Below are positions 39,375-39,525 of a DNA stretch of 64,000 bases, piece after piece. A model generated the notes under the pieces. It was given only the letters and a program-made list of their open reading frames with translations. It did not search any database and was not told where the DNA came from. Position 1 is the first letter of the stretch, and every line of letters starts with the position of its first letter. Source of the DNA: Octopus bimaculoides (taxonomy: Eukaryota); contig NC_068994.1 of the NCBI RefSeq assembly GCF_001194135.2, positions 38,902,816 to 38,966,815 on the forward strand, written 5' to 3'. A program made the position numbers and the translations under genes.

Positions 39375-39525
39375 ATGGTAGTTCTTCATAATATCCAGTA
39401 TCAGCTTCACTGCCCCCATGTCCACTGTCTGTGAAAGAAGACATCGTTGACATTTCAGAGAAATGATCAGTTGCTGTAGCTAAATGTCCTTTTTTATTGT
39501 CTTTTCCTTGACTTATTTCCGTCAC
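39375..39525 (-). CDS. Internal coding exon (151 bp, phase 0 to 1); probable cytoplasmic tail of a protocadherin or cadherin-type receptor
   Basis: Acceptor tttttctcctggtttcag|G, donor CAT|gtatgt; only one open frame: VTEISQGKDNKKGHLATATDHFSEMSTMSSFTDSGHGGSEADTGYYEELP. Exon status is well supported; the family call rests on the DSG motif only. Confidence 0.72.

What the first reader, a model, noticed from the sequence alone, without database searches (positions are those of the whole stretch)
39375..39525. Isolated protocadherin-like cytoplasmic exon, possibly a shared constant exon
Seen: strong splice sites and a single open frame encoding SEMSTMSSFTDSGHGGSE and YYEEL. No cadherin-repeat ORF lies in the 24 kb of window upstream on this strand, apart from what gaps could hide. 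Established: DSG(H/K)GDS-like motifs mark delta-protocadherin cytoplasmic tails, YEEL resembles the Src SH2 pYEEI motif, and coleoid cephalopods have expanded protocadherin clusters. Inference: this could be a distant tail exon spliced to one or several upstream ectodomain exons, convergent with vertebrate variable/constant exon organisation.
Basis: partly seen in the sequence, partly recalled or inferred. Interest (0 to 1): 0.72.

Follow-up and report, generated by a model that had tools for sequence, protein, structure and literature searches.

The report
Stray octopus protocadherin tail exon
This 151-base stretch is a real, unannotated copy of the second-to-last coding exon of octopus-type protocadherin (neuronal adhesion) genes, but in every related locus read here each gene carries its own copy, so nothing supports a vertebrate-style shared "constant" exon.

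Summary
On the minus strand, 39525..39375 is a 151-nt interval with an AG acceptor, a GT donor and a single open frame. That anatomy alone is not rare: about a dozen such intervals occur in the window.

Homology sets this one apart. It matches "exon 2" of octopod three-exon protocadherin genes, with the same length and phases (0 in, 1 out) and every invariant residue. Similarity stops at the donor, and dN/dS against paralogues is 0.15-0.30.

In 43 kb of Argonauta hians, six consecutive protocadherin units each carry their own exon 2 and terminal exon. Octopus gene models splice exon 2 onto the juxtamembrane end of the ectodomain exon.

The window holds no cadherin repeat on either strand. A phase-compatible candidate terminal exon lies 6.9 kb downstream (32429..32170); its support is weak.

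The closest relatives form a divergent subgroup. Its O. vulgaris member also has no cadherin exon within 35 kb upstream.

Most likely this is a dispersed protocadherin gene with a very long first intron. A relic, a tail-only gene or a shared exon remain possible.

The conserved core SxxDSGHG...YExLP resembles the GSK3/beta-TrCP site of vertebrate delta2-protocadherins.

The parts
39375..39525 (-). 151-nt coding exon, phase 0 in and phase 1 out, homologous to exon 2 (the penultimate coding exon) of octopod protocadherin genes. It encodes 50 codons plus the first base (T) of a split codon.
   Evidence: sequence and frames; homologues; same length and phases in Argonauta, O. vulgaris and Logan copies; all invariant residues kept; dN/dS 0.15-0.30.
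39526..39547 (-). Acceptor AG (39527-39526) with its polypyrimidine tract (TCAATTTTTCTCCTGGTTTC, 16 of 20 bases are pyrimidines).
39369..39374 (-). Donor GTATGT. Similarity to the paralogues ends exactly here.
39415..39438 (-). Codons 30-37, S-F-T-D-S-G-H-G: the conserved core (S30, G35 and H36 invariant; D33 and G37 near-invariant). It has the same S-x-x-D-S-G-[HK]-G spacing as the GSK3/beta-TrCP 'DSR' site of Xenopus PAPC, and it matches the D-S-G-x(2,3)-[ST] degron pattern.
39376..39390 (-). Codons 46-50, Y-E-E-L-P (Y46, E47 and L49 invariant; P50 near-invariant): a YxxPhi / Src-SH2-like tyrosine motif.
   Evidence: The function is inferred.
32430..39374 (-). Predicted intron of 6945 nt between the exon and the candidate terminal exon.
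   Evidence: Inferred, with no transcript data.
32170..32429 (-). Candidate terminal coding exon. The acceptor is ttattttag| (AG at 32431-32430). It starts with GT, which completes T+GT = Cys. It encodes 85 codons (FRNDHNT...NTFLSKPLPPIPNNYS) and ends with TAA at 32172-32170. The joined coding sequence is 411 nt, 136 aa plus stop.
   Evidence: phase fit, open frame. BLASTP against the O. vulgaris P0014 terminal exon, E = 0.001 pairwise; best of 2706 window ORF segments, but E = 1.1 window-wide; shared anchors C..D, QP(N/T)..VD, SKP-LPxxP, then stop. The support is weak.
32185..32205 (-). K-P-L-P-P-I-P near the predicted C-terminus, a class I SH3-ligand pattern ([RK]xxPxxP). It corresponds to KPLPALP in O. 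vulgaris P0014 and KPPLPAVP in the clustered genes.
   Evidence: The function is inferred.

Best explanation
The interval is a genuine, selectively maintained copy of the penultimate coding exon of an octopod-type protocadherin gene. These genes have three coding exons. Exon 1 is about 2.4 kb and encodes the signal peptide, six cadherin repeats, the membrane span and about 90 juxtamembrane residues, ending ...HQQ in phase 0. Exon 2 is the 151-nt cassette. Exon 3 is terminal. This copy belongs to a divergent subgroup (with O. vulgaris P0014 and two Logan-assembled paralogues). In that subgroup exon 2 lies tens of kb from any cadherin exon, so the ectodomain exon is most likely more than 24.5 kb upstream, beyond the window edge. 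The exon is probably spliced to a terminal exon at 32429..32170. The product would be a low-complexity cytoplasmic tail rich in Ser, Thr and Asn, and probably disordered. It would carry linear motifs: a Ser ladder running into SxxDSGHG, then YEELP, and a C-terminal KPLPPIP. By analogy with vertebrate delta2-protocadherins, phosphorylation of the SxxDSG core (GSK3/CK1-type) would recruit an SCF-beta-TrCP-type ligase and tune surface residence or turnover. The tyrosine and proline motifs would dock SH2/SH3 signalling or endocytic adaptors. Shown here: homology, exon structure, family gene structure, absence of cadherin repeats in the window, and codon-level constraint. Inferred: splicing partners, expression and all biochemical functions.
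For: Homologues: P0002 (Argonauta hians GAB1604426.1; 68% over 34 aa by phmmer, 72% over 32 aa by tblastn) and P0003, from a search of 1.84e9 proteins. A profile search returned 13 proteins: ten named ones, all octopod, and three unnamed ones from Logan assemblies of unidentified source. Argonauta loci L009 and L001 are contiguous (43 kb). They hold six consecutive units of ectodomain exon, 151-nt exon 2 and terminal exon, and two units are annotated as full 932/933-aa cadherin-domain proteins that include the tail. The in-silico spliced Argonauta product is colinear across both junctions with O. bimaculoides model P0006 (59% identity, E = 1e-85). The window copy has identical length and phases. 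Nucleotide similarity ends at the donor. All invariant residues are kept. dN/dS is 0.15-0.30 with dS of 0.8-1.8. The candidate terminal exon fits the phase and shares ordered motifs with P0014. The O. vulgaris relative shows the same layout: its exon 2-like and terminal exons are 4.1 kb apart, with no cadherin hit in the 35 kb upstream. [quoted passage not shown]
Against: There is no cadherin repeat in the window and no transcript evidence. The peptide, alone or joined to the candidate terminal exon, matches no protein in the word-indexed 5.8-billion-cluster search. That search is imperfect, because it also missed two annotated Argonauta full-length proteins that contain the tail. The donor has T at -1 where all homologues have G. 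The first 18 codons cannot be aligned with the clustered genes. The terminal-exon assignment is not significant window-wide (E = 1.1; rank 9 and E = 8 with the family HMM). No homologous upstream exon is shared between the window and the O. vulgaris locus. The dN/dS estimate rests on 32 codons and on paralogue comparisons.
Confidence: 0.55

Rival explanations
1. Orphan relic. The exon, with or without the candidate terminal exon, is the surviving 3' part of a protocadherin gene that lost its ectodomain exon through rearrangement or partial duplication. It is no longer part of a functional mRNA.
For: No cadherin exon lies in the window and none within 35 kb of the O. vulgaris relative. The exon is absent from the protein collection searched. 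The -1 donor base is weakened. The literature notes fragmentary protocadherin-like reading frames in cephalopod clusters that may be pseudogenes (PMC9068888).
Against: In DNA with 33% G+C, a 50-codon frame stays open by chance about 2% of the time and an 85-codon frame about 0.1% (my calculation from the composition). Yet both frames are open, in compatible phases, with the length kept at exactly 151 nt. All invariant residues are kept, and dN/dS is 0.15-0.30 at near-saturated dS. At least four members of this subgroup persist, and two are paralogues in one species.
Confidence: 0.2
2. A tail-only or re-used module. The exon pair belongs to a transcription unit without cadherin repeats. That unit would be either a small cytoplasmic protein derived from a protocadherin 3' end, or another membrane protein that acquired the cassette by exon shuffling.
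For: Two independent loci (the window and O. vulgaris L002) have the exon 2-like and terminal exons with no cadherin exon for 25-35 kb. The O. vulgaris annotation models it as a stand-alone 154-aa gene. Several Octopus models are likewise small stand-alone proteins.
Against: The exon opens in phase 0 at an acceptor and has no conserved start codon. The O. vulgaris start is a bare ATG|gt 25 kb upstream, which looks like an ab initio filler. The small Octopus models of the clustered type contain in-frame juxtamembrane sequence of the ectodomain exon, so they are truncated protocadherins. Octopus introns of tens of kb are ordinary (my own knowledge).
Confidence: 0.12
3. A shared constant exon. 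Several distant ectodomain exons, each with its own promoter, are alternatively spliced to this exon, convergent with the vertebrate clustered protocadherins.
For: Only negative evidence: the exon is far from any ectodomain exon, opens in phase 0 as a common acceptor would, and its upstream partner is unknown.
Against: All six related Argonauta units carry private copies of both tail exons. The published chromosome-scale analysis states that cephalopods do not use shared final exons (PMC9068888). No array of ectodomain exons lies in the 24.5 kb upstream.
Confidence: 0.05
4. A chance open frame with fortuitous splice-like dinucleotides.
For: About a dozen exon-like intervals of this size occur in the window by chance.
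Against: Specific homology to a defined exon family, with identical length, identical phase and all invariant residues.
Confidence: 0.01

Closest known systems
Tandemly duplicated octopod protocadherin genes (Argonauta hians contig BAAFZT010000037.1 at 29.12-29.17 Mb; O. bimaculoides LOC106872395, LOC106872396, LOC106881261 and A0A0L8H7G4; O. sinensis LOC118761562)
   Same: Homologous exon 2: 151 nt, phase 0 to 1, with the core D-x-F-x-E-M-S-T-x-S-S-x-x-D-S-G-H-G...Y-E-x-L-P. It is followed by a terminal exon that ends in a KP(P)LPxxP motif.
   Different: In those genes exon 2 lies 0.2-1.1 kb behind its own ectodomain exon and starts (M/I)F(I/V)PREE(S/T)MSPGYREL. Here no ectodomain exon lies within 24.5 kb, the first 18 codons are unrelated, and the putative terminal exon lacks DLCRYxSDxTW.
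O. vulgaris 'hypothetical predicted protein' P0014 (OX597827.1 at 2.08-2.13 Mb) and the Logan paralogues P0003 and P0013
   Same: The same subgroup, with GHG(W/G)SE after the core and no PREES head. The exon 2-like exon is far from any cadherin exon. The terminal exon is a few kb downstream and carries ...DLKS... and SKPLPxxP.
   Different: Only 42-44% identical over the exon. They are paralogues, not orthologues: the flanks share only repeats.
The DSR / CM2 region of vertebrate delta2-protocadherins (PAPC/PCDH8, PCDH10, PCDH18)
   Same: A short Ser-rich motif with identical spacing, S-x-x-D-S-G-[KH]-G, in a protocadherin cytoplasmic tail. In PAPC it is a GSK3-phosphorylated, beta-TrCP-recognised site that controls localisation and stability (PMC4291225).
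   Different: No similarity is detectable beyond about 8 residues, and no Pfam match to vertebrate protocadherin tail families. It could be convergence on a degron. Published surveys report no vertebrate CM motifs in octopus protocadherins (PMC6339937).
Constant exons of the vertebrate clustered protocadherin alpha and gamma loci
   Same: Small cytoplasmic exons that lie downstream of large single ectodomain exons.
   Different: The vertebrate constant exons are shared by many variable exons. The octopod tail exons are private to each gene in every locus examined. There is no sequence similarity.

Membership tests
Octopod protocadherin tail, exon 2 family | Sequence homology to exon 2 of genes whose exon 1 encodes cadherin repeats | tested here: met
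   The Argonauta exon 1 has 6 Cadherin domains plus Cadherin_2.
Octopod protocadherin tail, exon 2 family | Exon of 151 nt, with a phase 0 acceptor and a phase 1 donor | tested here: met
Octopod protocadherin tail, exon 2 family | A cadherin-repeat exon lies upstream on the same strand, in the same gene | tested here: not met
   No cadherin similarity anywhere in the window. This applies only to the 24.5 kb available upstream; anything beyond the window could not be tested.
Octopod protocadherin tail, exon 2 family | Followed by a homologous terminal exon in phase 1 | tested here: inconclusive
   The candidate at 32429..32170 fits the phase and the motif order, but it is not significant window-wide.
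Octopod protocadherin tail, exon 2 family | Spliced to an ectodomain exon in mRNA | not testable with these tools
   No transcript data for this genome. Relatives have supporting gene models.
Vertebrate delta-protocadherin cytoplasmic motifs (CM2 / DSR) | Profile-level similarity to vertebrate protocadherin cytoplasmic families | tested here: not met
   No Pfam family at E <= 10 for the exon, or at E <= 0.1 for the joined tail.
Vertebrate delta-protocadherin cytoplasmic motifs (CM2 / DSR) | The short motif S-x-x-D-S-G-[KH]-G | tested here: met
   The window has SFTDSGHG; the PAPC peptide is ISTKDSGKGD; a zebrafish protocadherin has SSKDSGHGDS. The pattern is only 8 residues long, so convergence is not excluded.
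Vertebrate delta-protocadherin cytoplasmic motifs (CM2 / DSR) | GSK3 phosphorylation and beta-TrCP binding | not testable with these tools
   Needs biochemistry.
Variable/constant exon organisation (vertebrate clustered protocadherins) | One set of 3' exons shared by several upstream ectodomain exons | tested here: not met
   This was tested in relatives only: six of six Argonauta units have private tail exons, and the literature states the same. For the window exon itself it is not testable without junction reads.
Variable/constant exon organisation (vertebrate clustered protocadherins) | Homology to the vertebrate constant-region families (my recollection: Pfam Cadherin_tail and Cadherin_C_2) | tested here: not met
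   No Pfam hits.

The most novel reading that the evidence does not exclude
The divergent subgroup of tail cassettes consists of an exon 2-like exon plus a terminal exon, with no cadherin exon for 25-35 kb in two species. It may not be the 3' end of one ordinary gene. It could be a common 3' module spliced to several distant ectodomain exons, or an independently expressed tail-only protein that competes with full-length protocadherins for their cytoplasmic partners.
Probability: 0.1. Interest if true: 0.75.

Novelty: new member of a known kind. Interest (0 to 1): 0.38.

Why it matters
Cephalopod protocadherin expansion is a textbook case of convergence with vertebrates, yet the cytoplasmic side of these receptors is almost unstudied.

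This work shows three things. First, a subfamily of octopod protocadherins has a conserved two-exon tail that several public annotations file as separate "uncharacterized" genes. Second, its core motif has the same spacing as the experimentally defined GSK3/beta-TrCP site of vertebrate delta2-protocadherins, although published surveys found no vertebrate-like motifs in octopus. Third, a divergent branch of this tail, which includes the window exon, lies far from any ectodomain exon.

If the motif analogy holds, it gives a testable handle on how octopus neurons regulate protocadherin turnover.

For the window itself the result is mostly corrective. The exon is real and belongs to a protocadherin tail, but the attractive "constant exon" reading has no support.

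Tried and rejected
- **Word-indexed homologue searches.** The exon peptide and the joined 136-aa tail both found nothing. The index is not exhaustive: the profile search missed two annotated full-length Argonauta proteins that contain the tail.
- **Pfam and PDB searches of the peptide.** No hits.
- **Top phmmer hit P0001** (E = 3e-6). Rejected: it is a 626-aa repeat protein that scores through 8 repeated 35%-identical stretches against the non-conserved N-terminal half.
- **Family HMM of the terminal exon against all window ORF segments.** No significant hit. Two of the better hits (13563-13685 and 32595-32684) look like copies of a dispersed repeat read in another frame.
- **The 89.5% match between window 56090-56250 and O. 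vulgaris L002.** I considered it as a conserved upstream exon. It is the head of a tRNA-derived SINE.
- **Search for a shared upstream exon between the window and the O. vulgaris locus.** tblastx timed out on microsatellites. ORF-against-ORF BLASTP found only exon 2 plus repeats.
- **Context look-ups for P0008, P0009 and P0011.** No record.
- **Identifying the species behind runs SRR118693xx from the literature.** Failed.
- **The 2015 octopus genome paper.** Not held.
- **Rfam and tRNA scans of the window.** Empty.
- **Structure prediction.** Not run. The tail is about 80% polar or small residues and is presumed disordered.

Full report
**1. What is in the sequence**

The window is AT-rich (about 33% G+C), full of microsatellites and scaffold gaps, and has no long ORFs. 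It looks like an animal genome.

The finding lies on the minus strand. After a pyrimidine-rich tract and tttcag, the exon starts at 39525 and runs 151 nt to 39375. The donor gtatgt follows.

Only one frame is open. It gives VTEISQGKDNKKGHLATATDHFSEMSTMSSFTDSGHGGSEADTGYYEELP plus one extra base (T). The exon is therefore phase 0 at the acceptor and phase 1 at the donor.

The donor is moderate, not strong: T stands at -1.

A crude scan for the same anatomy finds about a dozen comparable intervals in the window. The structure alone would not be convincing.

**2. Homology**

- Pfam and PDB searches gave nothing. A word-indexed search of 5.8 billion protein clusters also gave nothing.
- An exhaustive phmmer search of 1.84 billion representatives gave three hits. 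One is a spurious repeat protein.
- The other two are real. P0002 is a 145-aa "hypothetical protein" of the octopod Argonauta hians, 68% identical over 34 residues. P0003 is a 64-aa read-through ORF from Logan assemblies.
- A profile built from these sequences recovered 13 proteins. The ten with a source name are all octopod (Argonauta, O. bimaculoides, O. sinensis, O. vulgaris) and are all labelled hypothetical or uncharacterized. The other three are unnamed ORFs from Logan assemblies of unidentified source. None has a Pfam domain.

**3. What the homologues are**

The Argonauta protein lies in a head-to-tail array of protocadherin genes. Two adjoining loci, L009 and L001, cover 43 kb and hold six consecutive units. 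Each unit has three coding exons:

- A 2.4-kb exon with six Cadherin domains plus the protocadherin-type Cadherin_2 domain, a membrane span and about 90 juxtamembrane residues. In the two units checked it ends ...H(R/Q)Q|gtaaga in phase 0.
- A 151-nt exon 2, 0.2-1.1 kb downstream of the ectodomain exon in the five units whose ectodomain end lies in the loci read. This is the homologue of the window exon.
- A terminal exon, 0.8-2.8 kb further on, that begins DLC(R/K)Y and ends near KPPLPxVP.

Two of the six units are annotated as full 932/933-aa proteins that include the tail. In the others the annotators split the tail off as a separate small gene.

Splicing the Argonauta exons in silico gives an open 927-aa product. 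Its C-terminal 240 residues are colinear, across both junctions, with the O. bimaculoides model A0A0L8H7G4, at 59% identity and E = 1e-85.

Three further models from O. bimaculoides and O. sinensis also start inside the juxtamembrane region and continue into exon 2.

The family is therefore the cytoplasmic tail of a subfamily of octopod protocadherins. The window exon has exactly its length and phases.

**4. Is the window copy maintained?**

- In a seven-sequence DNA alignment, similarity covers the 3' 100 nt of the exon and stops at the donor GT.
- In a 13-sequence protein alignment, the window copy keeps all seven invariant residues (S29, S30, G35, H36, Y46, E47, L49) and all six near-invariant ones.
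- Over the 32 alignable codons, dN/dS against five homologues is 0.15-0.30, with synonymous divergence of 0.8-1.8.

This argues for purifying selection over most of its history. The sample is small and the comparisons are between paralogues.

**5. Surroundings**

tblastn with two complete Argonauta protocadherins finds no cadherin repeat anywhere in the 64 kb, on either strand. The gaps on the upstream side are too short, as written, to hide a 2.4-kb exon.

The window exon groups with a divergent subgroup (O. vulgaris P0014, Logan P0003 and P0013). These lack the PREES head and have GHG(W/G)SE after the core. P0003 and P0013 both occur in sequencing run SRR11869385, so they are paralogues within one species.

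In O. vulgaris the P0014 exon 2-like exon has its terminal exon 4.1 kb downstream. No cadherin similarity lies in the 35 kb upstream. The model's "first exon" is a bare ATG|gt 25 kb away, probably an ab initio filler.

The two loci are not orthologous. Apart from exon 2 they share only repeats.

**6. A probable terminal exon**

A motif scan found a 94-codon open stretch on the minus strand at 32454..32173. It has an acceptor ttattttag| at 32431-32430.

The exon would start with GT, which completes the split codon: T+GT = Cys. The joined coding sequence is 411 nt, 136 aa plus stop.

It shares ordered anchors with the P0014 terminal exon and the clustered family. These are an initial Cys, QP(N/T)...VD(L/I)KS, and SKP-LPxxP a few residues before the stop.

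Statistically the case is weak:

- Pairwise BLASTP gives E = 0.001.
- It is the best of 2706 window ORF segments with phmmer, but at E = 1.1.
- It is rank 9, at E = 8.2, with the family HMM.

I rate the assignment at about 60%.

**7. How it probably works**

The predicted tail is 80% polar or small residues and is presumably disordered.

[quoted passage not shown] That site is phosphorylated by GSK3 and is needed for beta-TrCP-dependent ubiquitination, localisation and stability (PMC4291225). A zebrafish protocadherin has SSKDSGHGDS.

The core also fits the degron pattern D-S-G-x(2,3)-[ST] (the pattern itself is from my own knowledge).

The invariant Y-E-x-L-P is a YxxPhi / Src-SH2-like site. 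KPLPPIP fits the class I SH3 ligand pattern.

The most likely role is a phospho-regulated turnover and adaptor-docking module. This is inference by analogy.

Several paralogues have DCG or DRG in place of DSG, so the degron reading does not hold for the whole family.

**8. Comparison with what is known**

The exon is a new, unannotated member of a known kind, the octopod multi-exon protocadherins.

Albertin et al. 2022 state that cephalopods do not generate protocadherin diversity by splicing multiple first exons to shared final exons, but by full gene duplication. They also note fragmentary protocadherin-like frames that may be pseudogenes (PMC9068888). The six Argonauta units agree with this.

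Styfhals et al. 2019 list no cytoplasmic octopus-specific motif apart from the PP1-binding pattern [RK][VI]xF. They found no vertebrate CM1-3 motifs in O. vulgaris protocadherins (PMC6339937). The DSR-like core seen here is a small addition to that picture, possibly a convergent one.

**9. Verdict**

- "Protocadherin cytoplasmic exon" is supported.
- "Shared constant exon" is unsupported and is contradicted by every related locus, though it cannot be formally excluded without junction reads.
- My ranking: a dispersed protocadherin gene with a long first intron (0.55), a relic (0.2), a tail-only or re-used module (0.12), a shared exon (0.05).

Noticed in passing
window 56090-56250 (-): The head of a tRNA-derived SINE, with box A/B-like GGCCCAGTGGTTAGG...GGTTTCGATTCC. 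It is 89.5% identical to a copy in O. vulgaris L002 11703-11861. ARAGORN and Rfam do not call it.
   Followed up: partly
window 59036-60072 (-): A degenerate, frame-shifted Tc1/mariner transposase remnant, with DDE_3 and HTH_Tnp_Tc3_2 domains spread over several frames.
   Followed up: partly
window 6078-6742 (-): ORF fragments that look like a second degenerate mariner-type transposase. Only weak helix-turn-helix Pfam hits support this.
   Followed up: no
L001 and L009 (Argonauta hians BAAFZT010000037.1, 29.12-29.17 Mb); proteins P0002, P0004-P0011: Public annotations split several octopod protocadherin genes. Tail exons 2 and 3 are filed as separate 'hypothetical/uncharacterized' proteins of 114-253 aa, while neighbouring units are annotated as full 932/933-aa proteins.
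   Followed up: yes
L009 7402-9767: The ectodomain exon of one Argonauta unit matches in two pieces that meet at 7854/7860. This could be a frameshift or indel, so a pseudogene or an assembly error.
   Followed up: no
L002 10001-10003: The O. vulgaris model for P0014 begins with a coding exon made only of ATG followed by gtacgt, 25 kb upstream of the next exon. It is probably an ab initio filler, not a real start.
   Followed up: partly
window, e.g. 2478-2705, 13517-13714, 48061-48243, 58661-58975, 61388-61603: Many copies, in both orientations, of a dispersed repeat whose translation reads ...[26 protein letters not shown].... It produces misleading ORFs and weak false hits to proline-rich motifs.
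   Followed up: no
window 39624-39695 and 39939-40300: An (AT)36 microsatellite lies 100 bp upstream of the acceptor. A 16-bp TG-rich minisatellite and TA/CA arrays lie just beyond it. They create the long spurious ORFs around 39743-40279.
   Followed up: no
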